Origin: Podarcis cretensis
Lineage: Eukaryota
NCBI GenBank assembly: GCA_951804945.1
Contig: OX638155.1
Span: 75,144,001-75,208,000 of the forward strand
Direction: 5' to 3'
Length of the DNA stretch: 64,000 nucleotides
The notes beneath the pieces are model-generated. The model searched no databases. It worked only from the letters and a program-made list of their open reading frames with translations, and had not been told where the DNA came from. Shown in pieces: positions 628-58,750 of the stretch (the stretch's first letter is position 1; each line of letters opens with the position of its first letter). Both the position numbers and the translations under genes were made by a program.

Positions 628-855
628 ATGCATTTCTATGTGTTAATCTATATTTTGTGACTGGGTAGGAGGACGAAGATTGCTTACACTGAAGCCATTG
701 CTCATCATTTACAGAAGCGATGAATGAGTTTTGTTTGCCTTTTTAAAGGCAATCAAATGTAACTTCCCAAACTAAAATTGCTTTTTGTAACAGTGTCATT
801 TGAATTTGGTGAAACATGCAAGTTGAGGACAAGTTTGTTCTGAGATGTACTAAAG

Positions 856-990
856 CAGGCATAGGCAAACTCAGCCCTCCAGATGTTTTGGTACTACAAC
901 TCCCATCATTCCTAGCTAACAGGACCAGTGGTCAGGGATGATGGGAGTTGTAGTCCCAAAATATCTGGAGGGCCGAGTTTGCCTATGCCT
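856..990. mobile_element. Palindromic hAT-type MITE (~135 bp)
   Basis: Long terminal inverted repeats (CAGGCATAGGCAAACTC...GAGTTTGCCTATGCCT). Same family as 8680 and 23312. Confidence 0.85.
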
Positions 991-8679: not shown

Positions 8680-8810
8680 CAGGCATAGGCAAACTCAGCC
8701 CTCCAGATGTTTTGGGACTACAACTCATCCCTGACCACTGGTCCTGTTAGCTAGGGATGATGGGAGTTGTAGTCCCAAAACATCTGGAGGGCCGAGTTTG
8801 CCTATGCCTG
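8680..8810. mobile_element. Palindromic hAT-type MITE
   Basis: Terminal inverted repeats CAGGCATAGGCAAACTC; perfect 8-bp TSD TCTTAGAG. Confidence 0.92.
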
Positions 8811-15143: not shown

Positions 15144-18100
15144 CTTCAGGGCATTATGCTAAGTAAATGCCAGTGTGTCATAACAAACAAGCAAAGAACA
15201 TAAGAAAAGCTTGGCTAGGCGAGACCAAAAGCTGATCTAGTTCAGCCTCCATAAGGGCAATAACCTTCTTCCCTCTGTTATTCCCCCATCAAATGGCATT
15301 TGGAGTCATGCTATGGTCATGGCTTTGCACAATCCACTTTCAGAGCTGTTTAAGCTGATGATCATCACAACTTCTTGTGCAAGCGAAACCCACAGTTAAA
15401 CTAAGTGCCCTGCAAAGAAGACCTTCCCTTTCTCTGTCCTGAATCTCCCACAATTAGGTTCACCAGATGACGCATGCTCGAGTATTATGAGAGAAAGAAA
15501 AGCTTAATTCTATCACTTTCGCCACATCATGCATAATATTATGTCTTATTTACTGTTTCCACCCTAAACACCTTTGAAGCGCAGCAACAACAAAAACCAG
15601 ATGAAAGCAAGTGTGGTTGCATCACTGTAGCGGTCCCTTCTAAGTGTGTGTAGAGGATTGAAGTCTGTACCTGGTTTACAGACCACTGAGAGAGAATGAC
15701 TTGTTTTTGCCAAGCTAACTGTGGTAAATTACTAAATGGTTCAGGATTAAAAAGTGAACCCTTTCCTGGAAACAAACAAATCAATGAACAACATAGCTAA
15801 AATGATAGGATCAGATTCAACTAATTAGTCTCACTAATGGAAGTCTCCACAGGGACCACCACTAATACCTGTACAAGGACTTCCCCTAATACGGTTGGGC
15901 TTTCTGCACTCTTCTCTCCCATAGTGCTGCTGACAAAAACCCAAAGTGGCTCTGGTGCAGTCAGGAGAAGCCCCAGAACAACAAAAGGATAGGGAGGGTC
16001 ATTCCATCTGGCAAGCTGAAATGCTTGAGTTGATGGAATGATTGGTCCAGCACTACATTGAATTCCTCCCAGAATAATCAATCAAGGGATGGGTAAAGAC
16101 AAGAAATTTACTACAGACATTACCACACTTGTCCGTCTGGTAAGATTATGCTTACTACTTGGCAGGACTACATAAATAACCCATTCATAAAGTGGTTACA
16201 ACCAAATCATTAACACCTGGTAACTGTTTGAGTGCAATTTGTGAAATTTGTGTGGGAGCTAACTATTCACTAATTATAGAGAAATATAAGGCCCATTTTA
16301 TTTTCTTCTCATGAGTAGGCAATATTCAGTTTCCAAGCAACAGGGAAATATCTGAAGGAAGTCAAGCTATAAGCATATTTGAAATATAAACTGGGAAATA
16401 ACTTAAATTAACGATATGATGTGCAAGGTCTAAGCTCATTAGTGTGGTGCAGTACTTAGCAACGAGATGATTAACTGCTTGCATTTATGCTGTAACAATT
16501 AGTCTTCAACATCACATTAAGATAAAAAGTGCTAATTCTTTTTTTTCTCACTTGCTATTGTTTCCGATCAGACTCTAAGAGGGTTTGCAGCATTCAACAG
16601 ATCTAGTCATTGCTATTGCTGGCATACCAGAGGGAATAAGCATGACCTGGACCTGCAGAGTTTACAAATCTCATTGAGGTTTTGCTCCATGAGCCCTCAT
16701 TTTGAATGATAGATCTGAAAGAGAATCAGAAGTGTGATTCATGCCACCCGAAAGGAGGTTCTGAAAACTAATGAAAATGCAAATCAGCCCTTATTTAGCA
16801 AGCTTTCAGAGCTCAGCTAATCTGGATAATTCAGCCAATTACTTAACATCAGAGACAGTGATAGGCCTACAATAGTTTAGAGCCACTTAATACTAAACAG
16901 ATTAACAAAACAGCTGCCTTAACTGAGTTTCTGGCAAGAGTGGCAGTGTTTGAGAACTGAAGTCTCTAAAGGAAATGATTGGTGTGGAAGATTATTGAGA
17001 ACAGGCTTCCCCAACCTAGTACCCTCCAGATGTCTTGGGCTATGACTCCTATCATCCCTGGGCACTGAAAATGTTGACTGGGGCTGATGGAGTTGTATTT
17101 TGAAACATATAGAGAGAACCAGGTTAAGGAAGGCTGATCAAGAAGGACCTGTGCCTGAGTAGCTAACCTGTACTGTCAGCTCTGTCTCTTTCTTGTAGAA
17201 GGCAAAACAAAGTGATGAGTTAAGAGCTACCAGGAACAAAAAAACTACCATTTAAAACCCTACATGTTAGACACATTATGGGACTCTATTCAAATCATAA
17301 AACTGAAGTTAGATGATGGGAAGATTCGTAGGTAGTACAGAAATATTGTTGTTCAGATGTATAGGTCAGATTATATTGGGAGGTCCAAACACTGATTCAA
17401 TAAGGGTCTCTTCACATACAATACTGACAAATCACAATTTGTGTGAATTTATTTATTCTGAGAGTTCTCTGTTGGACATATTGTGCTCTCCTCAAGGTTA
17501 GGGACTAGAACCTTATACCTGCATATTATTATTATTTACAGCATTTAAAGAAAATTAAGTAAATAAATAAATAAATATAGAAATTCCCTCAGTTAATTCC
17601 TGGAGGCTCACAAAGTATAGGCACTATGCAAGAGAAAAATGGGTACTAAGGACAGAAAGCTAGATTAGAATATAAAAAGTTGATGCATATTTTATAAAAC
17701 ATGGATTGGATCAAGACTTTGTTGATCTTTGTTTCCATTGAAAGAAATGAGAAACAGCAAGTCTCACTGATAAAAGTCTGTTAACTTAGTCTCAATCCCA
17801 ATGTCAAGGTTCCTTCATAAAAGTTGGTCATTGTTTCTTTTTTAGAAATGTATCTTATTTCTGTCACTCTTCCCTTTTGGAGGAGTTGAGGGATGAAATC
17901 TAACGGGAGGAAATATATTTTCTTTTTTAAGGAGGAGAAAGAAATATGGCAGACAGGATGAGAAAGAGACTTCTAAGAGAACTGAAAAAGAACACAGATG
18001 AGAAATCTTAAGATGACAAAAACACAGTATAGAACCATAGCTCAGTGGAAAAGCTTCTGCTTTGCATGTAGAAGGTTCAAGCTTTGGAATCTCCAGTTAT

Positions 18101-21067: not shown

Positions 21068-23311
21068 TCAGGCTGAAATTGCCGCAGTTTTCACACAGTT
21101 TTCAGAAATAAAGGATACAACAAATGTGTTTGCACGTCAGTGTATAAAATAGCCCTGTGGCTGTAGGAATATTGGTGGTCCATATCTGGAGCCTTCACAA
21201 GACACAGGCTAAAACACTGAAATAACATATTTATTTGTGCAGCATACAGCCTTAGAGACTACCCTGCAGACCAATAAGTCCTCTGTTCAAATTTCACCTC
21301 TTCTGTTAACCCACTAGATACACTGAGGACCACACTGCATCTTAGATAATGTATAACGGTGATTAAAAGCGACTTCAGGAGGAGGCAAATGAGAGAAATG
21401 AAATGGGGGAGGAGGGGAGGAAGAGAGACTTAACCTTTTCCTAACCTGCTTCATCCAGTGTATAGGTAAGCTATGAAACTCACTTCCACAGTGATGGACA
21501 CCAACCTGGATGGCTTTAAAATAGGATTGGACAAATTCATAGAGAAGCTATCAATGGTTACTAGTCATGATGGATATGCTCTGCCATTGTGGTCAGAAGC
21601 ACCGATGCTTCTGAATGTCAGTGGCTGGAAGCTGCGGGAAGGGAGAATATTTTTGTACTCAAATCCTGCTTGCTGATTTCCCACAGGCATCTGTTTGTGC
21701 TTTATTATGTATTTTGTGTTGGCATTTTGTAGTTTTGTGTTGTGATTTGCCCTGTGATCTTTGGATATGTATTTAATTCTTCATCATCATCATCATCATT
21801 GGCTACTGTGAAAACAGGATGCTGGATTAGAGGGGTCATGGAGTTTGATCCAGCAGCCTTTTCTTGTTTGCATACCATTTATCTGCTCTGAAATAGCCCT
21901 TTGTTGTAGCTTTTCCATTATGGGATTCAAACTGCATGTTTGTGAAAGCAAACACATTTTAAATGCTGCAGAGATAGGAAGCCATTTGTAAGTAGTGGTT
22001 TTGAAAAGGGAAGAATTAGTTCATGGGAAGGTTAATTCTTTTTCCTACTTACTCCATCCATGTTTTCAGTCTCCCCCTCCTGAAGTGGCTTTCATATTCC
22101 AAAAGGAGCAATGAGCTATCATTATACATAAGTAGTGTGCAGTTTGGCCCTCAGATAAACCATTATCTTCCAGCCTCAATGCCTTTCTTCAATACAGAGA
22201 TTGTGATAATGATCTGCTTTGACAGGTCATTATAAAGACTGCTGAGATAATGTATCTAAACTATCTATGAAATGTGTTTCATAGCCCTAGCTTGTGTTAA
22301 TGCCCCTGAAGTGCCATCAGAGACGTAGCAGTTAAAGCATAGGTGAAATTTGTGCCACATACATGGTAAATTTGGTCCATTTATGAACAAGTACAGGTAA
22401 ATACGTATCCTTCTGGAAAGAACTCCGTAACACAGAGCTGAAATTAAATGGATTATTTCCGCTGACTGCATCAGAAATTCTCAATATTCTCAAGGACTGT
22501 AATGTCCAGAAATGTCATAAAATAATTGGAAATTGCTCTATGTAGGATGGAGACTTGTACGACACCAAAAGAGAAGGAATGCATTACCCTAAAGAGAGAG
22601 AGGATTAAAGCTACTACTAAGAACACAGTCTGATTAATGACATGTGTTCTTAATCCAGATGATGCCTCAAAAGAGCATATTGAGGAGGGGGCTAAGCATG
22701 ATTAGCTATTGATAATACTTGCCTTCAAAACTATATAAAATAAAATAAGGGGTACAATTACTGGCATGTTCCAACTATTGGAATCAATATTTTTGATGCT
22801 TGTTTAACTAGCACCACCACCCTAAAAAGTAAAATATCATGGTGGTAAAATATCAAGATGACATAGATGTTAAAATATCAATATGATATCACCAATATTT
22901 AAGATTTTTTTTCTGACAAAGCAAATGTAATGTTTTTCCACACATTTCTTTAAAAACCCTATAATATCATTTACCTGTTATGATAGACAACTGAAAGTTA
23001 ATTCACTTGGAAAAATTTCCAACCCACAAGGAATGCTATCATATGAAAATGTCCATCATGCATTAAGCTTCTTGTACAATGAATGCCTGTAAGCCACACA
23101 TACTATGATAGTAGCACTGAGTGGACTTGAAAAATGTTGCTACAATTGACAACAAAGTATTACATGACAAAAAACTCTTAGCATAAACATTAAATATCTA
23201 TATACCTGAAGGATGCCATCTAATGATGTAAATCATATTTTAAATAAATAGGAGCAAGGGAGAAGCAAGTACAGTAGACATAATTGAGACAAACACACAT
23301 AACGTATAGAC

Positions 23312-23447
23312 CAGGCATTCCCAAATTCGGCCCTCCAGATGTTTTGGGACTACAATTCCCACCATCCCTGACCACTGGTCCTGTTAGCTAGGGATGATGG
23401 GAGTTGTAGTCCCAAAACATCTGGAGGGCCGAGTCTGGGGATGCCTG
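23312..23447. mobile_element. Palindromic hAT-type MITE
   Basis: CAGGCAT...ATGCCTG termini; 8-bp TSD GTATAGAC/ATATAGAC. More decayed relatives lie at ~17000-17135, ~36690-36790 and ~63010-63120. Confidence 0.9.
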
Positions 23448-23503
23448 ATATAGACCATCAACTCAACATATACATAATTAATTATAAATATATGATAAAA
23501 CTA

Positions 23504-24863: not shown

Positions 24864-27755
24864 GGACAAATGTGGGAAACTTCTGTCATGGCAATTGAAA
24901 AAAAGGCAGAAAATGAACACTGTAACCAGTCTAGAAATGGATGGAAAAATTATCCACAAACCTAATGAGATAAACAATTGCTTTCAAAGCTTTTTTAAGA
25001 AATTGTATGCACAAGGGCCAATTAATGAACAAGAAATAGAGGAATTCATCAGAAAATACGGCTTACCAAAAATTCCAGAACAAAGTAAAAGGACTCTAAA
25101 TGAGGAAATAACAGAACAAGAAATAGAGGGTGCCATCCAAAATATGAAATTGGGAAAATCACCAGGACCAGACGGCCTGACGGCTAAATACTACAAAATG
25201 CTGAAAGAATGCTTGATACAACCATTGAAGGAAGTTTGCAATGAAATTCTGAAGGGGAAAAAGGCACCTGAATCGTGGAAAGAGGCTTTCATCTCACTTA
25301 TACCGAAGACAGAAACTGAGAAGAAACAGGTTAGAAACTACCGCCCTATATCTTTACTCAATGTGGATTACAAAATTTTTGCAGACATTTTGGCAAAAAG
25401 ATTGAAAAGAGTGTTGATAGACGAGATTCATAAGGACCAAACAGGCTTTCTCCCAGGGAGATATATGTCAGACAATGTGAGGAATATTATAGACATTTTG
25501 GAGTTGTTAGATGTTGACATTAACAGGAAAGCAGTTCTGATTTTTGTAGACACGGAGAAAGCCTTTGACAATATCTGTTGGACTTTTATGAAAAAGAATC
25601 TCCAAGGGATGGGGGTAGGTCAAGGTTTTGAAAACGGTATAGGTGCAATATATTCCCAACAAAAGGCCAAGTTAATTGTAAACAATGTGGTAACAGAAGA
25701 AATACCCATAGAAAAAGGTACACGGCAGGGATGCCCAATATCCCCTTTGCTTTTTATATCAGTCCTGGAGGTTTTGTTAAACATGATTAGAAAGGACCAG
25801 TTGGTTAAAGGAGTTCAGGTCGGAGTTAGACATTACAAGTTAAGAGCATTTGCAGATGATCTAGTATTGACCTTGCAACAGCCAGACACTAGTACTAAAA
25901 GAGTATTAGAACTAATTGAAATATTTGGTCGAGTAGCAGGTTTTAAATTGAACAAACAAAAAACGAAAGTGTTGGGAAAAAATTTAACAATGGAAGAAAG
26001 AGAGAGTTTTCAGAATGAAACAGGCCTGGAAATAACAAAAAGGGTAAAATACCTGGGGTTAAACTTAACAACCAAGAATGTGAACCTATTTAAGGATAAT
26101 TATGAAAAAAGTTGGGCAGAGGTAAAGAAGGATCTGGAAACATGGTCAAGGTCGAAACTTTCCTTGTTAGGCCGAATTGCTACTATTAAGATGAATGTAT
26201 TGCCTAGAATGCTGTTTTTATTCCAGACGTTGCAGATTTTGGACAAGATGGACTGTTTCAAGAAGTGGCAGAAAGATATATCAAAATTTGTCTGGCAGGG
26301 CAAAAAGCCCAGAATTAAATTCAAGATCTTAACTGATGCAAAGGATAGAGGGGGGTTTGCCCTGCCGGACTTAAGACTTTATTATGAATCGGCAGCTTTC
26401 TGCTGGTTGAAACACTGGCTACTTCTTGAGAACACTGACATTTTGGACCTGGAAGGGTACGACAATAACTTTGGTTGGCATGCATACTTATGGTATGACA
26501 AGGTAAAGGTGTATAAAAGTTTTAAAAACCATATTGTAAGGAAAGCATTGTATAATGTTTGGATTAGATATAAAGATCTGCTGGAAAGTAAAACCCCCAG
26601 GTGGGTGTCACCAATGGAAGCCAGGGAAGTTAAAAAGCTTAATATGGACTCTAAATGGCCAAAATATCATGAGATTTTAGAATATGATGGTGAAAGGGTG
26701 AAATTTCAGAGTTATGAGAAACTAAAGCCTAAGGTTCGAGATTGGTTGCATTACCATCAGATAAATGAGACATTTAAACAGGACAGGAAAATAGGATTTC
26801 AGAAAGAGAAGTCAAAATTAGAAACAGAACTGTTGGAATCCAATACTAAGAACTTATCAAAAATGTATAACTTGCTGTTGAAATGGAATACACAGGATGA
26901 AACGGTGAAATCAGCAATGATAAAATGGGCACAAGATATTGGTCATGATATTATGTTTGCTGACTGGGAACAGTTATGGACCACCGGTATTAAATTTACT
27001 GCATGTAATGCTTTAAAAGAAAATATTATGAAAATGATCTATCGGTGGTACATGACCCCAGTCAAGCTTGCAAAAATTTACCATTTGCCTAATAATAAGT
27101 GTTGGAAATGTAATGAGACTGAAGGCACTTTCTACCACCTTTGGTGGACCTGCCCAAAGGTTAAAGCTTTCTGGGAAATGATCTATAATGAAATTAAGAA
27201 GGTCCTTAAGTGGACTTTTCCTAAGAAACCAGAGGCTTTCCTCTTGGGCATGGTTGGCCAAGTGGTGTTAAGGAAGGATAGGATTTTCTTTATGTACGCC
27301 ACTACAGCAGCAAGAATTCTACTGGCAAAGTATTGGAAGACGCAAGAACTACCTACTCTGGAAGAATGGCAAACAAAGGTGATTGACTTTATGGGACTGG
27401 CCGAGATGACGGGCAGAATCCGTGACCAGGGGAAAGAGACAGTGGAAGAGGACTGGAAGAAATTTAAAATATATCTTAAAAATAATTGTAAAATTGAGGA
27501 ATGTTAAGATGTCAGGGGGTAAGAGGTAAAGAATTGCAGCAGTAATCACAAAACTAAAGGAATCTTTATGAAAGGGAATTAAGATAATGGACCTAAGGGT
27601 TGCTAAAGAACCATTAAACAAGGATGCAGGGATGGGGAGGTATGGGGAAGTCAAAAGAAAGAAGGGTATGAAATGATGAGTTGGAAATTATATTGTTTTG
27701 TATTGTTTTTGTTATCTGTTTGAAAAACGAATAAAAATCATTTAAAAAAAAAAAA
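24864..27755 (+). mobile_element. 5'-truncated L1-clade LINE (ORF2 fragment, 3' UTR, poly(A))
   Basis: TSD AGGAAATTTG at 24854-24863 and 27756-27765. AATAAA at 27730 followed by an A-tail. ORF2 frame open from the 5' junction. Confidence 0.93.
24865..27507 (+). CDS. L1 ORF2 C-terminal ~880 codons: reverse transcriptase plus CCHC zinc knuckle, no endonuclease domain
   Basis: Motifs KSPGPDG, NYRPISLLNVDYKI, KAFD, GTRQGCPISPLLF, FADD, KYLG and CWKC..HLWWTC. The frame extends upstream of the ORF call (DKCGKLLSWQLKKR). No native start codon, so probably untranslated. Confidence 0.85.
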   Translation, partial: DKCGKLLSWQLKKRQKMNTVTSLEMDGKIIHKPNEINNCFQSFFKKLYAQGPINEQEIEEFIRKYGLPKIPEQSKRTLNEEITEQEIEGAIQNMKLGKSPGPDGLTAKYYKMLKECLIQPLKEVCNEILKGKKAPESWKEAFISLIPKTETEKKQVRNYRPISLLNVDYKIFADILAKRLKRVLIDEIHKDQTGFLPGRYMSDNVRNIIDILELLDVDINRKAVLIFVDTEKAFDNICWTFMKKNLQGMGVGQGFENGIGAIYSQQKAKLIVNNVVTEEIPIEKGTRQGCPISPLLFISVLEVLLNMIRKDQLVKGVQVGVRHYKLRAFADDLVLTLQQPDTSTKRVLELIEIFGRVAGFKLNKQKTKVLGKNLTMEERESFQNETGLEITKRVKYLGLNLTTKNVNLFKDNYEKSWAEVKKDLETWSRSKLSLLGRIATIKMNVLPRMLFLFQTLQILDKMDCFKKWQKDISKFVWQGKKPRIKFKILTDAKDRGGFALPDLRLYYESAAFCWLKHWLLLENTDILDLEGYDNNFGWHAYLWYDKVKVYKSFKNHIVRKALYNVWIRYKDLLESKTPRWVSPMEAREVKKLNMDSKWPKYHEILEYDGERVKFQSYEKLKPKVRDWLHYHQINETFKQDRKIGFQKEKSKLETELLESNTKNLSKMYNLLLKWNTQDETVKSAMIKWAQDIGHDIMFADWEQLWTTGIKFTACNALKENIMKMIYRWYMTPVKLAKIYHLPNNKCWKCNETEGTFYHLWWTCPKVKAFWEMIYNEIKKVLKWTFPKKPEAFLLGMVGQVVLRKDRIFFMYATTAARILLAKYWKTQELPTLEEWQTKVIDFMGLAEMTGRIRDQGKETVEEDWKKFKIYLKNNCKIEEC

Positions 27756-27877
27756 AGGAAATTTGCCATAGACAGAAGAGGCACGTGGGAGGGACTGCAT
27801 TGTATACCATCGTCCACATACTCTGATTCTTCTGGCACCAAGGCAAAGAAATTAATAAGGTAATGTAAAGTTATTGT

Positions 27878-30800
27878 CCCCTTCATGGATCACTGCCTTG
27901 CCGTGGCGAAGGGGCTTGAATAACTCAGAGAAGCTATGAACTATGCCGAGCAGGGCACCCAAGATGAACAGGTCATAGTGGAGAGTTTTGACCAAACGTG
28001 ATCCACCTGGAGGAGGAACCGGCAAGCCACTCCAGTATCCCTGCCAAGAAAACTCCATGGACAAAGACAACAGGCATATAAAAGTTATGACACTGGAAGA
28101 TGAGCCCCTCAGGTCGGAAGGTGTCCAACATGCTACTGGGGAAGAGCGGAGGACAAGTACAAGTAGATCCAGAGCTGATGAAGCGGCTGGGCCAAAGCCG
28201 AAAGCGAAAGGAAAGTCCAATGCTGTAAAGAAAAATATTGCATAGGAACCTGGAATGTAAGAACCATGAACCTGGGTAAGTTGGATGTGGTCAAAAATGA
28301 GATGGCAAGAATAAATATTGACATCCTGGGCATCAGTGAACTAAAATGGACGGGAATGGGCGAATTCAGTTTGGATGACCATCATATCTACTACTGTGGG
28401 CAAGAAACCCGTAAAAGAAATGGAGTGGCCCTCATAGTCAACAAAAGAGTGGGGAAAGCTGTACTGGGATGCAATCCCAAAAATGATAGAATGATCTCGA
28501 TACGAATCCAAGGCAGACCTTTTAACATCACAGTAATCCAAGTTTATGCACCAACTACTGCTGCTGAAGAAACTGAAATTGACAAATTCTATGAAGACTT
28601 ACAAGACCTTATAGAAGTGACACCAAAGAAGGATGTTCTTCTCATTATAGGGCATTGGAATGCTAAAGTAGGGAATAAAGAGATAAAAGGAACAACTGGC
28701 AAGTTTGGCCTTGGAGATCAAAACGAAGCAGGGCAAAGGCTAATAGAGTTCTGTCAAGAGAACAAACTGGTCATCACAAACACGCTTTTCCAACAACACA
28801 AGAGACGACTCTACACGTGGACATCACCAGATGGGCAGCATCGAAATCAGATTGATTATATTCTCTGCAGCCAAAGATGGAGAAGCTCTATACAGTCAGC
28901 AAAAACAAGACCTGGAGCTGACTGTGGCTCAGATCATCAGCTTCTTATAGCAAAATTCAAGCTTAAACTGAAGAAAGTAGGAAAAACCACTGGGCCGGTA
29001 AGATACAATCTGAATCAAATCCCTTATGAATACACAGTGGAAGTGAGGAACAGGTTTAAGGATTTAGATTTGTTGGACAGAGTGCCTGAAGAACTATGGG
29101 TGGAGGCTCGCAACATTATACAGGAGGCAGCAACGAAAACCATCCCAATGAAAAGGAAATGCAAGAAAGCAAAGTGGCTGTCCAACGAGGCCTCACAAAT
29201 AGCAGGGGAGAGAAGGCAAGCAAAATGCGAGGGAGATAGTGAAAGATACAGGAAATTATATGCAGATTTCCAAAAAATAGCAAGGAGAGACAAGAAGGCC
29301 TTCTTAAACGAGCAATGCAAAGAAATAGAGGAAAACAACAGAATGGGAAGAACCAGAGATCTGTTCAAGAAAATTGGAGATATGAAAGGAACATTTCGTA
29401 CAAAGATTACCATAATAAAGGACAAAAGTGGTAAGGACCTAACAGAAGCAGAAGACATCAAGAAGAGGTGGCAAGAATACACAGAGGAATTATACCAGAA
29501 AGATATGGATGGCTCGTATACCCCAGGTAGTGTGGTTGCTGACCTTGAGCCAGACATCCTGGAGAGTGAAGTCAAATGGGCCTTAGAAAGCACTGCAAAT
29601 AACAAGGCCAGTGGAAGTGATGGTATTCCAGCTGAACTATTTAAAATTTTAAAAGATGATGCTGTTATGGTGCTACACTCAATATGCCAGCAAATTTGGA
29701 AAACTCAGCAGTGGCCAGAGGATTGGAGAAGATCAGTCTACATCCCAATCCCAAAGAAGGGCAGTGCCAAAGAATGCTCCAACTACCGCACAATTGCACT
29801 CATTTCACACGCTAGCAAGGTTATGCTTAAAATTCTACAAGGAAGGCTCAAGCAGTATGTGGACCGAGAACTCCCAGAAGTGCAAGCTGGATTTCGAAGG
29901 GGCAGAGGAACCAGAGACCAAATTGCAAACATGCGCTGGATTATGGAGAAAGCTAGAGAGTTCCAGAAAGACATCTACTTCTGCTTCATTGACTATGCAA
30001 AAGCCTTTGACTGTGTCGACCACAGCAAACTATGGCAAGTTCTTAAAGAAATGGGAGTGCCTGATCACCTCATCTGTCTCCTAAGAAATCTCTATGTGGG
30101 ACAAGAAGCTACAGTTAGAACTGGATATGGAACAACTGACTGGTTCAAAATTGGGAAAGGAGTACGGCAAGGCTGCATATTGTCTCCCTGCTTATTTAAC
30201 TTATATGCAGAATTCATCATGCGAAAGGCAGGGCTGGATGAATCCCTAGCCGGAATTAAGATTGCCAGAAGAAATATCAACAACCTCAGATATGCAGATG
30301 ACACAACCTTGATGGCAGAAAGTGAGGAGGAATTAAAGAACCTTTTAATGAGGGTGAAAGAGGAGAGCGCAAAATATGGTCTGAAGCTCAACATCAGAAA
30401 AAACGAAGATCATGGCCACTGGTCCCATCACCTCCTGGCAAATAGAAGGGGAAGAAATGGAGGCAGTGAGAGATTTTACTTTCTTGGGCTCCATGATCAC
30501 TGCAGATGGTGACAGCAGTCACAAAATTGAAAGACGCCTGCTCCTTGGGAGAAAGGCGATGGCAAACCTAGACAGCGTCTTAAAAAGCAGAGACATCACC
30601 TTGCCAACAAAGGTCCGTATAGTTAAAGCCATGGTTTTCCCAGTAGTGATATATGGAAGTGAGAGCTGGACCATCAAGAAGGCTGATCGCCAAAGAATTG
30701 ATGCTTTTGAATTATGGTGCTGGAGGAGACTCTTGAGAGTCCCATGGATTGCAAGAAAATCAAACCTCTCCATTCTGAAGGAAATCAGCCCTGAGTGCTC

Positions 30801-31073
30801 ACTGGAAGGACAGATCGTGAAGCTGAGGCTTCAATACTTTGGCCACCTCATGAGAAGAGAAGACTCCCTGGAAAAGACCCTGATGTTGGGAAAGATGGAG
30901 GGCACAAGGAGAAGGGGACGACAGAGGACAAGATGGTTGGACAGTGTTCTCGAAGCTACAAACATGAGTTTGACCAAACTGCGGGAGGCAGTGGAAGACA
31001 GGAGTGCCTGGCGTACTCTGGTCCATGGGGTCACGAAGAGTCGGACACGACTAAACGACTAAACAACAACAAC
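27878..31073 (+). mobile_element. Near full-length Bov-B (RTE clade) LINE, ~3.2 kb
   Basis: TSD AAAGTTATTGT at 27867-27877 and 31074-31084. (CAA)n tail after ...GGGGTCACGAAGAGTCGGACACGACT. AP endonuclease plus RT ORF with Bov-B-like sequence. Confidence 0.95.
28057..31062 (+). pseudogene. Bov-B endonuclease/RT ORF broken by two frameshifts (~28205 and ~30400)
   Basis: Pieces are ORFs 27988..28245, 28266..30512 and 30412..31062. Motifs GTWNVRT, ILGISE, VYAPT, SDHQLL, GVRQGCILSP and YADD. The start position is inferred. Confidence 0.85.
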
Positions 31074-37607: not shown

Positions 37608-38230
37608 ATGGAAAGCTGCCTTATACTGAGCTGGACCACTGGCCCCAGGGCCAGACGAAGGGGGGTGCGGTGGGGGCGGATGGCCCCAGGTGTCTTTGCT
37701 GAGGGGGGTGACATTTGGCTCGCCACCCGCCCGCAACCCCCAAGCCTACCCCGAGCCATCAGGGGAAGGGGGGAGCTGCGCCGCTTTGCCGGCGGCATTA
37801 CCCCCTTCCCTCTTCGTTTTGACAGCTGGGGGAGGCTTGGGAGTCACGGGAGGGCAGCACACTGAATGTCTGCTATCAGTGGCTCGCTCCTCCCCCATGG
37901 GCGGCTCGCTCCACCTCCAACTGCAGGGTGCATGCACCGCTCCATGCACCCGAGCAGCTATCCCAACACCTTGGAGGGCACCCTCTGTGCCCTGCCCCCC
38001 TTGGGAGCATGCCCCACTCCCTTTGGGAGCATGTCCGTCCTGGGCAGCATGGGCATATGCCCCGCCACTGATTGGCCCATCTAGTTCACTACTGTCTACA
38101 CTGACTGACAGCAAGTATCCAGGTATTTCAGGCAGGAGGCTATCTGAACCCTACCTGGAGATTCTGAGGAATGAACCTGGGACCTTCAACATGCAGAGCT
38201 GATGCCCTACCACTGAGTCAAGGCTCCTCC
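37608..38230 (-). mobile_element. tRNA-derived squamate SINE interrupted by the MITE above
   Basis: Head ...GAACCTGGGACCTTC..CATGCAGAGC.GATGCCCTACCACTGAG and tail AAGCTGCCTTATACTGAG. Relatives lie at ~18030-18190 (+) and, split, at 55321-55400 / 56680-56740 (-). Confidence 0.7.
37646..38070. mobile_element. GC-rich hAT-like MITE nested in a SINE
   Basis: CAG...CTG ends with imperfect inverted repeats; TSD ACTGGCCC/ATTGGCCC. The host SINE reads through when the insert is removed. Confidence 0.75.
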
Positions 38231-38332
38231 TGGGTTTAAGTAGCAGCGAAAGACCACAACTTTATTTTATGGCTAAAGTAATTTGAAAAACACACTTTTA
38301 TGAAAAAGCGTGTTCTCCTTCAGGGAGAGCAT

Positions 38333-39156
38333 GTGTTGCGGTGGGGTCTACTGAGCCACCCCCTTTGTTGCTGGGTAAGTTCTCCAGGATGGCCAGGGGG
38401 CATTGATTGGATTGCCGAGTTGCTGGGGGAAAAGTTATGTTGCAATTTTGGTGGGAGGGGTAAAAGGTTTAAATACTCTGCACGTAGCCTTGTACTTTCT
38501 CTTTTGCTGCGTGCAACGGATCACCCGCCCACCCGCCCTAGAATAAGGGGTTCTCGCGTTGACCTTGCTATGCCTGTCATGGGGTCGTCTGCCTTTGAGC
38601 AGGGGCCTGGTAGGAATTTTTCCACCTGGCAAATTGGCTGGCTGGGTGGTTTTTGCCTACTGCGTAGCAAATTGTCACAACTTGTAAGGTTGTGGTTAGG
38701 CATTGGTTATAAATCTGGTGGAGGAGGGGTTAGGATAGGCTGGGCCTGCCCCTCCATGGAGGGGTTAGGATAGGCTGGGCCTGCCCCTCCATGGTTGCTG
38801 CGGAAAGGGAATTCCGTTAAAGGAATCCTGGGGCTTGCCATCTTTTCGTCCAATCCCTGGAATGGGACTAGGGCCGGCAAGCCTTCGGGGAGCAGGCGGG
38901 TGAGGGTTGAGGGTCTGTGTCTCAGCTCCAATTCTTCCCCGACTTGCTTTCCCCCGCACTGTCTTTCGGTGGTGCCCGGAAGTCAGTTCTGTCCCCAGGC
39001 GGGGGGACAGATAGTCTTAACCAATGCCTAAACAACCACTCACAGTTTGTATTTTAATAAAGTTGTGGCCAAAATCATGCCAAAAATCTTAAACAAAAAA
39101 TTACGTGTCCGTTGTGAGTTATTTTGGGGGGTGGATTGGGGACCTCAACACGCAAG
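38333..39156 (+). mobile_element. Unclassified LTR-like structured repeat, copy 1 (TATA, ENE-like hairpin, long-range stem, AATAAA)
   Basis: GC-rich block sharing collinear motifs with 55.9-56.68 kb: CCCACCCGCCC, GCAGGGGCCTGGTAGGAATTTT, TTAGGCATTG, ATTCCGTTAA.GGAAT, CAATGCCTAA, AATAAAGTTGTGGCC. The 5' boundary is approximate and no TSD was seen. Confidence 0.7.
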
Positions 39157-53408: not shown

Positions 53409-53414
53409 AGACTG

Positions 53415-53526
53415 AAGGATGGTGACAACCTTATGAGGGCTATCATCTTGAAGGTGGACAACATACTCAAGGATGGTGACAACCTTATGAGGGCTATCAT
53501 CTTGAAGGTGGACAACATACTCAAGG
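53415..53526. repeat. Perfect 54-bp tandem duplication
   Basis: AAGGATGGTGACAACC...GGACAACATACTC twice, followed by AAGG. Confidence 0.95.
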
Positions 53527-55898: not shown

Positions 55899-55929
55899 CT
55901 TCCAAATAGGATCCTTTTCAAGGAGGATC

Positions 55930-56680
55930 CTGCTTGCGCTCGGGACCTTGGGGCCCCATGGCATCCGGAGGCAGGGCCTAGCCCGGCATTGCTAGGGCGG
56001 TCTCTCTATCACCCCAGTTCCAGCACCCAATCAGGTTGTTTCACAAGTTGGGGGAGGAAGAGGGTTTATAAATGGCAGCGAGATGCGTCAGAACCACTCG
56101 CTTTGTGCTGCCGAACACCTACCCACCCGCCCTCTTTGGTTTCTGTGCTTTGGCCTTGCTTGGGACTTCGGTTGGTCGCCTGCTTTGCGGCAGGGGCCTG
56201 GTAGGAATTTTGTCCACTTGGCAGATTGGCACTGGCCATTTGGTTTTCGCCTACCTCCCAGCAATCATCACAACTTTGTAAGGTTTGGCGGTTAGGCATT
56301 GACTTAGTTGTGGTTGGGGGAGGGGAGGTGTGGTCATCACCTGCCTCTCCTTAAAAAAAGGTATTCCGTTAATGGAATCTGGGGGTTCTGGATCTCATCC
56401 GAAGTCCACCTGAGGGGCTAGGGGCATGCCAGGACCACAGGAACCCCGGGCTGAGCTATAGCCGATTTGCATCGATGTAGCTCCCTCGTTTGATTTACCC
56501 TTCCAGACCTCCTGCAGGGCGGGCAGGGGTCAGTTTTAGTTTGTCAATGCCTAAGCCAATACCGCTCAGATTGTGTAATCAATAAAGTTGTGGCCTAAAT
56601 TTTGCCCATTAATTTCAAACTAAAATTTGATTTCTGTCTGAATTTATTTCTGGGGGGTTACCTATGGTCCTCGAAGCACA
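55930..56680 (+). mobile_element. Unclassified LTR-like structured repeat, copy 2
   Basis: Same ordered motif set as 38333-39156, with CCAAT (~56027), TTTATAAAT (56065-56073) and AATAAA (56581). The 5' boundary is uncertain. Confidence 0.7.
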
Positions 56681-58750
56681 AGGACTGAACAGGGGTGGGA
56701 TGTTCTTCATGCAAAGCAGATGTTCCACCACTGAGCTATATTTATTAGCACACATCCGCATGACCAAAATTACCGTGCTGATAGCACCTAATTGCAATAA
56801 CCAATTATACATAATTATTATAGACAATCTTTCTTGGCACAGGAAGGGTCCTTAAGCTTGGTGCTATAGCACAGTCTGTTTCCCTGACTGAAAAGAGCTT
56901 AGATGCCGCAAGACAGCCAGTAATCCCCCTGGGCGAGTGCTTTTCTGACTTCCTTATCATACGAAACATTTATGAAAAGGACACTTTGGGAGGCATAACA
57001 TTTGCTGTATGATTCTTGGCAGCGAAGCAACTTCGGAAGCATTCGATAAGAAAGTTGTTCTTTCTTTAAAGCTGGTTGTTCCATGTGTTTCGTTAATTAC
57101 TAAAGGCAAATGGATCACGAAAGCAGTAACAATCAATGGAGACAGAGGTTTTCTTAAATTATCATCACTTAGCTGGTTGCTTATCACTCTGGTATGAAGT
57201 GTCTTGTCTGTCTGAAGAGACATCAAGTGTGAGAATCTCCCTGGAGGAGGGGGGTCATGGCTGTTTCCTGGATGATGACATATTAGCTTGCTTTCATTGC
57301 CATTTGGCAGATAGCTGGTGTATCAAATTGTATTTTTTTAAAGAACCACTGGGCTAGTCAATGCACTCGCCTGAATCCAAACACATATTAGACAGATATA
57401 TATATAAATGAATAAATATTGCAAAGCAGATTGAAGATGCCAATTTGAACAAGAAATAATTCTTGAGACAATCACGCTCAGGCTGACAGCTGTGTAAATT
57501 GGAAAAGATTTTCAGCAAATTATTAGCACATCTTTGCCCACTACATCGTCTTTATTATAATGTAGTAGTAACTTTACTCTGAAGCTCCTGACAACTTGAA
57601 GTAATGTGATGATAAGATAAAATAATGGAGTGTTCATTTGCATTTGTAACAAAACACTGTAATTTCATCAGTCTTATTTAATGTTTGTCTTGCATCAGAT
57701 GGGTCACTACAAAACATTAGAATCTTAAAGTAGACCAAACATGTGAGGAATGATTCATATTCGGGGGTGAGGGCTGGAGGGGAAATCAGTAAATAGGACA
57801 AAACTGATTCTGAAATGATCAAGTTTACACTATGAATATATATATATGCTTAACTTGATGCATTTTGGGATATGAAATCATAAAAGCAGTTCCATTTGTT
57901 TTTATTATCTGTATTTTAATAATTTGTTTGTATAATGATTTAGTTCTATTACATTTAAATTGCTTTAAAATTCTTTTCTTTATGTGTTTTTAGCTTTTTG
58001 TATTTTATCGATGTTAAGTATTTTTTATGTGCCTTTAGACCCAGGACTCAGCTATACAGCTGCAAATATAACGTTTTAAGATCATTTTAAGTGCACTATA
58101 CAAATGTGACACCAGAGGGCAATGGTGAGCTTATGGTCAATTCAATATATTTTCCAAAACGTATTTTAAAAAAGCATTCTCTCAGATTCTCTAGATTCCA
58201 CCCCAGTCTGGGAAAAAGGTGGGGTGATGGACAATATAATTAATGAGGCAATTCCTTTCCCCATTCAGAATCTGAACCCTTGCAGTGTTTATAAAGAGAA
58301 CTGAAGAAGAAAAAGGGAAACCTTATACGTATACAGAAAACAAAGCCAGCGTGGAAACAGAGTCATTGCTACAAGCATAATGCTAGAATTATATATACAT
58401 ATTGCTATAGTTGTAATATAAATACCAGCAGCATAATATTCGACTTCCATTGTCTTCTTTTAAGAATTTTGATAGAAAATTAGAGGAACTCTTATGTAAT
58501 AAAGTTATGCTTGTCTGTGACTGAAATAAAGTTTGATAGTAATAAAGAAAGGAAGAGGAACAGCTTTAGCCAAATATGCATAGTCATGGTTTCCCCTTTT
58601 AAGCCTTATTGTAAAAGAGGATAAATTCACAATAGACAGAACAGACAGACTAAGCCTGAGCAATAGAAGACTGACCAACTCTCACAACTACTTCAAGAAG
58701 AGGTCATACAATACATTGCTGTATTGATAATTGATTTTAGTGATCTAGAT

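What the first reader, a model, noticed from the sequence alone, without database searches (positions are those of the whole stretch)
38609..38661. ENE-like (poly(A) triple-helix) motif in a lizard interspersed repeat
Seen: on the + strand the RNA reads GGUAGG-AA-UUUUU-CCACCUGGC-[AAAUUGGCUG]-GCUGGGUGG-UUUUU-G-CCUACU. That gives a lower stem GGUAGG/CCUACU, a U5/U5 internal loop, and a 9-bp upper stem (including G-U pairs) closed by CC/GG. The diverged second copy (56200-56255) keeps the architecture, GGUAGG-AA-UUUUGU-CCA...UGG-UUUUCG-CCUACC, while the apical part differs. Established: the KSHV PAN RNA ENE has the same UUUUUCC...GGUUUUU internal-loop layout and clamps the poly(A) tail in U-A.U triples, blocking deadenylation. 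ENEs are known from viruses, MALAT1/NEAT1-type loci and plant and fungal transposons. Inference: this repeat family carries an ENE that stabilises an intronless polyadenylated RNA. I do not know of this being described for a squamate repeat of this kind, but I cannot check the literature.
Basis: partly seen in the sequence, partly recalled or inferred. Interest (0 to 1): 0.8.

Follow-up and report, generated by a model that had tools for sequence, protein, structure and literature searches.

The report
ENE-like hairpin in lizard retroelement repeat
A very abundant, protein-less lizard repeat carries a well-conserved RNA hairpin with two facing runs of five U, the shape that some viral and plant-transposon RNAs use to grip their own poly(A) tail, but no test here shows that it is transcribed or binds the tail.

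Summary
At 38609-38661 (+) the letters fold as described: a 6-bp lower stem, a U5/U5 internal loop and a 9-bp upper stem (-21.6 kcal/mol, z -3.15). A strict descriptor finds it once in the window, against 0.01 expected per shuffle.

It lies in an ~848-nt non-coding, high-copy unit (38308-39155). The unit has a TATA-like box, a conserved AATAAA on the same strand, 7-nt inverted termini and no target duplication, so it looks like an LTR-like or DIRS/Ngaro-like terminal repeat.

Copies A and B match in only ~50% of aligned columns, and the 5' half of the hairpin is their best-conserved block (83-90%). A 330-nt-spanning helix with five two-sided compensatory changes places the predicted poly(A) site beside the hairpin. 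G-U pairs favour the + strand.

Several points weigh against an ENE:
- The hairpin itself shows no two-sided covariation.
- Both U runs are interrupted in copy B.
- AA and G spacers separate the loop from the lower stem.
- A competing fold exists.
- No RNA evidence was obtained.

I put the ENE reading at about 0.4. The scan has flagged this family before on other DNA of this genome.

The parts
38308..39155 (+). Repeat unit, copy A (~848 nt, non-coding, high-copy); termini GCGTGTT...AACACGC, no target-site duplication
   Evidence: Summed contig depth in run X1 jumps from 141 to about 200,000 at 38300 and falls back to 73 after 39155. One head-to-tail joint runs 39155->38308. Termini were read. 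ORFs here have no Pfam match or homologues.
38468..38475 (+). TATA-like box (TTTAAATA); the copy B equivalent is TATAAA at 56067-56072
   Evidence: Read directly; aligned. The transcription start was not determined.
38583..38607 (+). Hairpin 1, immediately 5' of the ENE-like hairpin; when intact it suppresses the competing fold
   Evidence: RNAalifold consensus of A and B has 9 pairs, one changed U-G to C-G.
38609..38661 (+). ENE-like hairpin: lower stem 38609-14/38656-61; spacers AA 38615-16 and G 38655; U5 38617-21 facing U5 38650-54; upper stem 38622-30/38641-49; loop 38631-40
38674..38709 (+). 5' arm of the long-range helix (CACAACUU segment plus GGUUGU-GG-UUAGGCAUUGGUUA segment)
   Evidence: Pairs with 39018-39069. 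Five pairs are changed on both sides yet kept in copy B. The helix is present in the MFE of both full-length models.
38723..38794 (+). 35-nt tandem duplication private to copy A, inside the domain enclosed by the long helix
   Evidence: Tandem Repeats Finder: 2.1 copies, 100% match. Other family copies lack it (joints that skip 43-44 nt).
39018..39069 (+). 3' arm of the long-range helix; overlaps the last two bases of AAUAAA and the following 8 nt
39056..39061 (+). AATAAA poly(A) signal inside a 15-nt block identical in A and B. CA dinucleotides at 39070-71 and 39076-77 are the likely cleavage sites, and GU-rich sequence follows at 39106-39125
   Evidence: Cleavage site inferred, not observed.
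55905..56682 (+). Repeat unit, copy B (diverged subfamily; ends approximate)
   Evidence: blastn and MAFFT against copy A.
56200..56255 (+). Copy B hairpin: GGUAGG/CCUACC, UUUUGU facing UUUUC, upper stem CCA/UGG + 2x2 mismatch + UGGC/GCCA
   Evidence: (pair probability 0.8-0.98 in all contexts).
56268..56303 (+). Copy B long-range helix, 5' arm; it pairs with 56543-56593, which covers most of AAUAAA (56581-86)

Best explanation
The hairpin is a selected cis-acting RNA element of an abundant, non-coding, LTR-like or DIRS/Ngaro-like terminal-repeat unit transcribed on the + strand. Most likely it acts as an ENE-type poly(A) clamp. The proposed sequence of events is as follows. Transcription starts a little downstream of the TATA-like box. 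The RNA is cleaved about 10-16 nt after AAUAAA (39056-61). The long-range helix (38674-38709 with 39018-39069) then folds the 3' end back, so the tail emerges about 1-8 nt from the helix base. The hairpin is attached 12 nt from the other strand of that base. The first adenosines of the tail enter the U5/U5 loop. They form Watson-Crick pairs with one U run and Hoogsteen pairs with the other, giving U.A-U triples stacked between the flanking G-C pairs, and this slows deadenylation and decay of the retroelement RNA. Shown here: the fold, its rarity by chance, its conservation, its strand polarity, the conserved poly(A) signal and the covarying long-range helix. Inferred: transcription, the cleavage site, tail binding and stabilisation.
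For: The fold and its statistics are (z -3.15; 1 hit against 0.01 expected). The unit is a high-copy family: in X1 the summed contig depth over the conserved blocks is 10^3-10^4 times the flanking single-copy depth, with peaks at 38550-38700, 38800-38850 and 39000-39100. Copies A and B match in 50% of columns overall but in 83-90% at 38592-38635, the highest value in the element. The apical part (38631-46) is hypervariable across the family while both flanks are conserved, as expected if only the loop-proximal parts matter. In X1 the G insertion that breaks the 5' U run accounts for 563 of 377,264 depth units. Two G-C pairs abut the U loop on the upper side, and the top of the lower stem is G-C, G-C. 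Three G-U pairs in hairpin A and three in the long helices make the + strand the better-folding strand. The block AATAAAGTTGTGGCC is identical in both copies and lies on the same strand. The long helix has five pairs changed on both sides yet kept. No internal A-rich tract is shared by A and B that could occupy the U runs. For precedent, ENEs are defined as a stem-loop with a U-rich internal loop next to G-C pairs. They are reported in LTR retrotransposons, within LTRs and in stickleback retroviruses (PMC7583470, PMC13541005). The Evade ENE lies upstream of a whole 3' LTR and is functional (PMC12501189).
Against: No run is on record as RNA. The guessed-RNA runs X15-X17 also cover sequence past the poly(A) site, as low-coverage DNA would. 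The hairpin has no two-sided compensatory change: 10 pairs are the same, 3 changed on one side (G-U to Watson-Crick) and 2 are broken in B, which is about what chance predicts for six substitutions. Copy B has UUUUGU and UUUUC, and the G insertion makes up 25-48% of depth in X15 and X17, so a subfamily spread without an intact U5. AA on the 5' side and G on the 3' side separate the U loop from the lower stem, which could displace the A-minor platform. In copy A the hairpin probability falls to 0 with a 5' end at 38500 and to 0.2-0.35 when hairpin 1 is cut. No Rfam family matches either copy at E<=10. The hairpin would also sit about 110 nt from the 5' end of the same RNA, where other roles are plausible.
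Confidence: 0.4

Rival explanations
1. The hairpin is a selected RNA structure of the retroelement with a different job: packaging or dimerisation, nuclear export (CTE-like symmetric internal loop), control of poly(A)-site use between the 5' and 3' repeat copies, or display of single-stranded U runs to a U-binding protein. Candidates for such a protein include upstream-sequence-element factors of the cleavage machinery, hnRNP C or PTB, or an Sm/LSm ring on AAUUUUU.
For: The same conservation, strand polarity and long-range helix fit any cis-acting RNA role. The long helix pairs with part (A) or most (B) of AAUAAA, as a poly(A)-signal occlusion device would. The invariant AA before the 5' U run and the UUUUGU variant resemble Sm-type sites (from my own knowledge, not tested). 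Interrupted U runs in a spreading subfamily are easier to tolerate for protein binding than for five consecutive U.A-U triples. A conserved alternative hairpin that presents AAUUUUU as its loop exists.
Against: Two U5 runs exactly opposite each other and bracketed by G-C pairs are the specific ENE signature and are rare by chance. No known protein-binding element matched in Rfam. None of these roles explains why both strands of the loop are U runs.
Confidence: 0.35
2. The ENE resemblance is a coincidence. The hairpin is a conserved palindromic stretch that hitchhikes in a successful repeat, or is conserved for a DNA-level reason such as a recombinase, integrase or transcription-factor site, and the U runs have no function.
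For: The hairpin shows no two-sided covariation. High conservation of a 45-nt block could equally reflect a DNA-binding site.
Against: No shuffle produced a hit as strong. The block is the best conserved in an element otherwise at about 50% identity. The G-U pattern favours an RNA of the + strand. The neighbouring long helix is clearly selected as a paired structure.
Confidence: 0.2
3. It is a MALAT1-like (tancRNA-type) 3' module, of which many lizard loci are published.
For: Lizard MALAT1-like loci are reported (Zhang et al. 2017, as cited in PMC12941219). The U-rich stem-loop is superficially similar.
Against: No genomically encoded A-rich tract follows the hairpin. ARAGORN finds no tRNA-like structure. 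No mascRNA or other Rfam hit appears. A canonical AATAAA is present instead.
Confidence: 0.02

Closest known systems
KSHV PAN RNA ENE and other single-domain viral ENEs
   Same: A stem-loop with a U-rich internal loop, U runs on both strands, G-C pairs next to the loop, and a position upstream of the poly(A) site of an intronless polyadenylated RNA (definition from PMC7583470, PMC4378190).
   Different: The host is a lizard repeat. AA and G spacers lie between the loop and the lower stem. The hairpin lies about 400 nt upstream in linear distance. It would be brought near the tail by a covarying long-range helix, which I have not seen described for ENEs. Binding is untested.
ENEs of plant and fungal transposable elements (TWIFB1 dENE, Evade/Copia93 ENE), and those reported in stickleback retroviruses
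   Same: An ENE carried by a mobile-element RNA, sometimes embedded in the LTR (PMC13541005) or lying hundreds of nt before the poly(A) site (PMC12501189). The proposed benefit is a longer RNA life and more copies.
   Different: Most plant elements have double domains, whereas this one has a single domain. The element here is non-coding, lacks a target duplication, and is of unresolved class. No squamate or other amniote transposon ENE turned up in the held literature, and the two key papers (Tycowski 2012, 2016) were not readable.
MALAT1 / MEN-beta / lizard tancRNA triple-helix modules
   Same: A U-rich stem-loop used to protect a 3' end in vertebrates.
   Different: Those use a genomically encoded A-rich tract and a tRNA-like RNase P site. 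Neither is present here.
Structured R regions of retroviral LTRs (e.g. the HTLV RxRE that folds the poly(A) signal next to the cleavage site)
   Same: A long, highly structured segment between the transcription start and the poly(A) site, with a long-range helix that changes the spatial relation of 3'-end signals (from my own knowledge).
   Different: Here AAUAAA is already next to the cleavage site, and what is brought close is the U-loop hairpin.

Membership tests
ENE (poly(A)-clamping triple-helix element) | Stem-loop with an internal loop made of U runs on both strands, facing each other | tested here: met
   U5 at 38617-21 faces U5 at 38650-54 and both are open in the MFE and centroid. 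It is unique in the window against 0.01 expected. Copy B has only UUUUGU/UUUUC.
ENE (poly(A)-clamping triple-helix element) | G-C pairs directly adjacent to the U loop, and a G-C-rich lower stem for A-minor contacts | tested here: inconclusive
   On the upper side, C38622-G38649 and C38623-G38648 abut the loop. On the lower side, G-C and G-C top the stem but are separated from the U runs by AA (5') and G (3'). Whether that is tolerated cannot be computed.
ENE (poly(A)-clamping triple-helix element) | Lies in the 3' part of a polyadenylated transcript, on the transcribed strand | tested here: inconclusive
   A conserved AATAAA lies 395 nt (A) or 326 nt (B) downstream on the same strand, and the long helix brings it close. 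No RNA run holds the stretch on record, and contigs cannot show strand or ends.
ENE (poly(A)-clamping triple-helix element) | Stems and U runs conserved across homologues, with covariation in the stems | tested here: inconclusive
   It is the best-conserved block of the element, and its flanks are depth peaks across the family. But 0 pairs changed on both sides, 3 changed on one side and 2 are broken. Only two full copies were available.
ENE (poly(A)-clamping triple-helix element) | Match to a curated ENE covariance model | tested here: inconclusive
   No Rfam 15 family matches at gathering score or at E<=10 in either copy. I could not confirm that Rfam holds an ENE model, and the published models were not available.
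ENE (poly(A)-clamping triple-helix element) | Binds oligo(A) as U.A-U triples and stabilises an RNA in cis | not testable with these tools
   Needs gel shift or melting assays and a reporter decay assay.
MALAT1-like 3' module | Genomic A-rich tract and a tRNA-like structure just downstream of the U-rich stem-loop | tested here: not met
   The sequence after the hairpin is not A-rich. ARAGORN finds nothing. No Rfam hit.
Terminal repeat of an LTR or tyrosine-recombinase (DIRS/Ngaro) retroelement | Repeated unit with its own promoter-like box and poly(A) signal, and short inverted termini | tested here: met
   TATA-like box at 38468-75, AATAAA at 39056-61, termini GCGTGTT/AACACGC containing TGTT..AACA, and a high-copy unit with sharp edges.
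Terminal repeat of an LTR or tyrosine-recombinase (DIRS/Ngaro) retroelement | Target-site duplication (integrase LTR elements) versus none (tyrosine-recombinase elements) | tested here: not met
   No direct repeat flanks 38308 and 39155. That, and one head-to-tail joint, lean towards the tyrosine-recombinase type, but one copy is thin evidence.
Terminal repeat of an LTR or tyrosine-recombinase (DIRS/Ngaro) retroelement | Found flanking an internal coding region in full-length elements | not tested
   No full-length element lies in the window. The LINE ORFs at 24895-31062 are unrelated. The rest of the genome could not be searched.

The most novel reading that the evidence does not exclude
A vertebrate (squamate) retroelement family with a very large number of copies uses a single-domain ENE together with a dedicated long-range 'docking' helix. 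The helix delivers the element's own poly(A) tail to the U loop. This would be an ENE architecture not described so far, and the first ENE in an amniote mobile element. Copies scattered in the genome could lend the same stabiliser to host transcripts that end in them.
Probability: 0.3. Interest if true: 0.7.

Novelty: new member of a known kind. Interest (0 to 1): 0.5.

Why it matters
If the hairpin really clamps the tail, RNA triple-helix stabilisers are part of the toolkit of animal retroelements too, not only of viruses, two vertebrate lncRNAs and plant or fungal transposons. It would help explain how a protein-less repeat reached such copy numbers in a lizard genome. It would also supply a compact natural module (hairpin plus docking helix) for studying how a tail is handed to an ENE. 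If it does not bind the tail, it is still a clearly selected, multi-helix RNA fold of a poorly classified retroelement family, which is of routine interest.

Tried and rejected
- **Rfam.** Gathering thresholds on the whole window, and E<=10 on both copies, gave only noise hits.
- **MALAT1-like module.** There is no tRNA-like structure and no A-rich tract.
- **Protein-coding reading.** The 157-aa ORF across the hairpin (38300-38773) and the neighbouring ORFs have no Pfam family and no word-search homologues. Copies A and B differ by indels here, so I rejected this reading.
- **Minus-strand reading.** The fold is weaker (-14.0 against -21.6 kcal/mol) and G-U pairs become mismatches.
- **Provirus with the LINE ORFs.** The ORFs at 24895-31062 are non-LTR reverse transcriptase and endonuclease. 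No second repeat copy lies near them.
- **More family copies.**
  - Only two copies are in the window.
  - A two-part pattern found nothing in metagenome and genome contigs. A shorter pattern found nothing in viral contigs.
  - That shorter pattern gave 10 metagenome hits that match only the pattern itself, so they are chance.
  - Using the spurious ORF to reach other copies through the protein index also failed.
- **Covariance model or family consensus.** I built none: too few sequences were available, and the element may be retrovirus-like.
- **Expression.** No holder is on record as RNA, and all runs are contigs, so strand, ends and tails could not be read.
- **Key papers.** Tycowski 2012, Tycowski 2016 and Zhang 2017 are not held.

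Full report
**Observation**

On its own the RNA folds into the stated shape, which is both the minimum-energy and the centroid structure:
- a lower stem GGUAGG/CCUACU;
- unpaired AA+UUUUU on the 5' side and UUUUU+G on the 3' side;
- a 9-bp upper stem with two G-U pairs;
- a 10-nt loop.

The energy is -21.6 kcal/mol. Dinucleotide shuffles average -13.5, giving z -3.15, and none of 200 folds as well. The reverse complement folds at only -14.0.

I wrote a strict descriptor requiring:
- a run of at least five T on each side;
- an upper stem of at least 5 bp that starts right at the runs;
- a lower stem of at least 5 bp within two bases of the runs.

It finds exactly one site on both strands of the 64-kb window, this one. 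The expectation is 0.01 per dinucleotide-preserving shuffle, and no shuffle gave a hit of equal stem lengths. That figure is post hoc. A whole genome of this size would still hold hundreds of weaker chance hits, so the motif alone proves nothing.

**What the hairpin sits in**

blastn of the region against the window finds only one relative, around 56200. Contigs of four public runs were laid at 80% likeness.
- The stretch from about 38308 to 39155 is a very high-copy repeat. In the whole-genome-like run X1 the flanks have a summed word depth of 73-141. The unit reaches 2x10^5 to 7.6x10^5. The tool warns that this is not a copy number.
- Depth peaks at 38550-38700, 38800-38850 and 39000-39100. 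Those stretches stay above 80% identity across the family.
- One contig joins 39155 back to 38308 with a single extra base, a head-to-tail junction.
- The unit begins GCGTGTT and ends AACACGC, a 7-nt inverted pair that contains TGTT..AACA. It has no flanking direct repeat.
- It encodes nothing recognisable.
- On the + strand it has a TATA-like box (38468-75; TATAAA at 56067-72 in copy B). It also has an AATAAAGTTGTGGCC block that is identical in both copies (39056, 56581), followed by GU-rich sequence.

These are the features of an LTR-like terminal repeat. The missing target duplication and the head-to-tail joint lean towards a tyrosine-recombinase (DIRS/Ngaro-type) element. Other readers of this scan suggested that for the same family, but I could not test it. 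The large ORFs at 24895-31062 are unrelated LINE genes.

**Conservation**

Copies A and B are very old relatives. A global alignment matches in only 50% of columns, and most of the unit aligns no better than noise. A few islands stand out:
- 38592-38635, at 83-90%, the highest in the element. It covers the 3' end of hairpin 1 and the 5' half of the ENE-like hairpin.
- 38679-38706.
- 38812-38841.
- 39049-39078.

Across the family the apical part of the hairpin (38631-46) is so variable that laid depth collapses from about 3x10^5 to 4.5x10^3. Both sides of it are depth peaks. In X1 the G insertion that breaks the 5' U run, as in copy B, is negligible (563 of 377,264). In the small runs X15 and X17 it makes up 25-48% of depth.

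**Pairing evidence in the hairpin**

Between A and B, 10 of the 15 hairpin pairs are unchanged. Three changed on one side, each from G-U to a Watson-Crick pair. Two upper-stem pairs are broken in B. None changed on both sides. Six substitutions with three compatible outcomes is about what chance gives. The hairpin is therefore conserved but has no covariation support from these two copies.

The U runs themselves are not spared in B, which reads UUUUGU and UUUUC. In B the hairpin is predicted with probability 0.8-0.98 in every context tried. In A it ranges from 0.9-0.99 for 5' ends at 38540-38580 down to 0 for a 5' end at 38500, where 38503-38530 pairs with 38640-38672. It falls to 0.2-0.35 when hairpin 1 is cut, because GCC.GGU.GG then pairs with CC.ACC.GGC and leaves AAUUUUU as a loop. 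With hairpin 1 intact, RNAalifold returns hairpin 1 plus the ENE-like hairpin with open U runs.

**The long-range helix**

Twelve nucleotides after the hairpin, 38674-38709 pairs with 39018-39069. In B, 56268-56303 pairs with 56543-56593. Five pairs are changed on both sides and still pair: G-C to A-U, U-A to C-G (twice), U-A to G-C, and G-C to U-A. For two sequences that is strong evidence of a selected base-paired structure spanning about 330 nt.

The outer segment of the helix (CACAACUU with AAGUUGUG) uses the bases right after AAUAAA. In B it uses most of the hexamer itself. The likely cleavage sites are the CA dinucleotides at 39070-71 and 39076-77, so the tail would emerge 1-8 nt beyond the helix. 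The hairpin hangs from the other strand of the same helix end. G-U pairs in this helix, as in the hairpin, fit only the + strand RNA.

**Interpretation**

The published definition of an ENE is a stem-loop with a U-rich internal loop next to G-C pairs that clamps the poly(A) tail in U.A-U triples (PMC7583470, PMC4378190). ENEs are known:
- in plant and fungal transposons, including inside LTRs;
- in stickleback retroviruses (PMC7583470, PMC13541005);
- in Arabidopsis Evade, where the ENE lies upstream of an entire 3' LTR and raises RNA stability and mobility (PMC12501189).

The lizard hairpin has the loop, the upper G-C pairs, the strand, a conserved poly(A) signal and a structural device that would deliver the tail. 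No conserved internal A-rich tract competes for the U runs. This makes an ENE the single most likely function. I hold it at about 0.4, for these reasons:
- Transcription and tail binding are unshown.
- The AA and G spacers depart from the simple layout.
- A subfamily has interrupted U runs.
- The hairpin lacks covariation.

A different cis-acting RNA role is nearly as likely, for example control of the poly(A) signal, packaging, export or binding of a U-tract protein. A functionless coincidence remains possible. A MALAT1-like module is excluded.

**Limits**

- All runs were contigs and none is on record as RNA, so expression, strand and 3' ends could not be read.
- No further copies could be fetched.
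- Because the unit may be retrovirus-like, and only two copies were at hand, I built no consensus and no covariance model.
- The scan has flagged this family on other pieces of the same genome. One follow-up there reached a similar, untested verdict. I treat those notes as leads only.

Noticed in passing
window 38254-38266 (-): A third exact copy of AATAAAGTTGTGG lies on the opposite strand 42 nt left of copy A (3 matches in the window against 0.22 expected). It may be a fragment of another family member, or of the complementary helix arm.
   Followed up: partly
window 38050-38225 (-), 56690-56745 (-), 18037-18084 (+): tRNA-derived SINE copies flank both repeat units. In run X1 the SINE shows far lower summed depth than the repeat unit, while in the small runs X15-X17 it is the deeper of the two.
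   Followed up: no
window 24895-27507 and 28266-31062 (+): Two adjacent non-LTR retrotransposon ORFs lie here. One has a reverse-transcriptase domain only. The other has endonuclease plus reverse transcriptase and an intact 748-aa frame.
   Followed up: partly
window 38723-38794 (+): A perfect 35-nt tandem duplication lies inside copy A, within the domain enclosed by the long-range helix. It is absent from other family copies.
   Followed up: yes
window 38522-38538 and 56118-56133 (+): A CACCCGCC doublet (CACCC-box-like) is conserved in both copies between the TATA-like box and the hairpins. In copy A it can pair with the 3' strand of the ENE-like upper stem and so compete with the hairpin.
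   Followed up: partly
window 38812-38836 and 56364-56387 (+): A small conserved hairpin AUUCC-GUUAAN-GGAAU lies inside the enclosed domain. It is another conservation island and depth peak of the family.
   Followed up: no
window 844-990, 8680-8810, 23304-23455: These are palindromic MITE-like repeats of about 130 nt with arms 88-98% complementary.
   Followed up: no
window 53411-53518: Two tandem 54-nt units at 98% identity.
   Followed up: no
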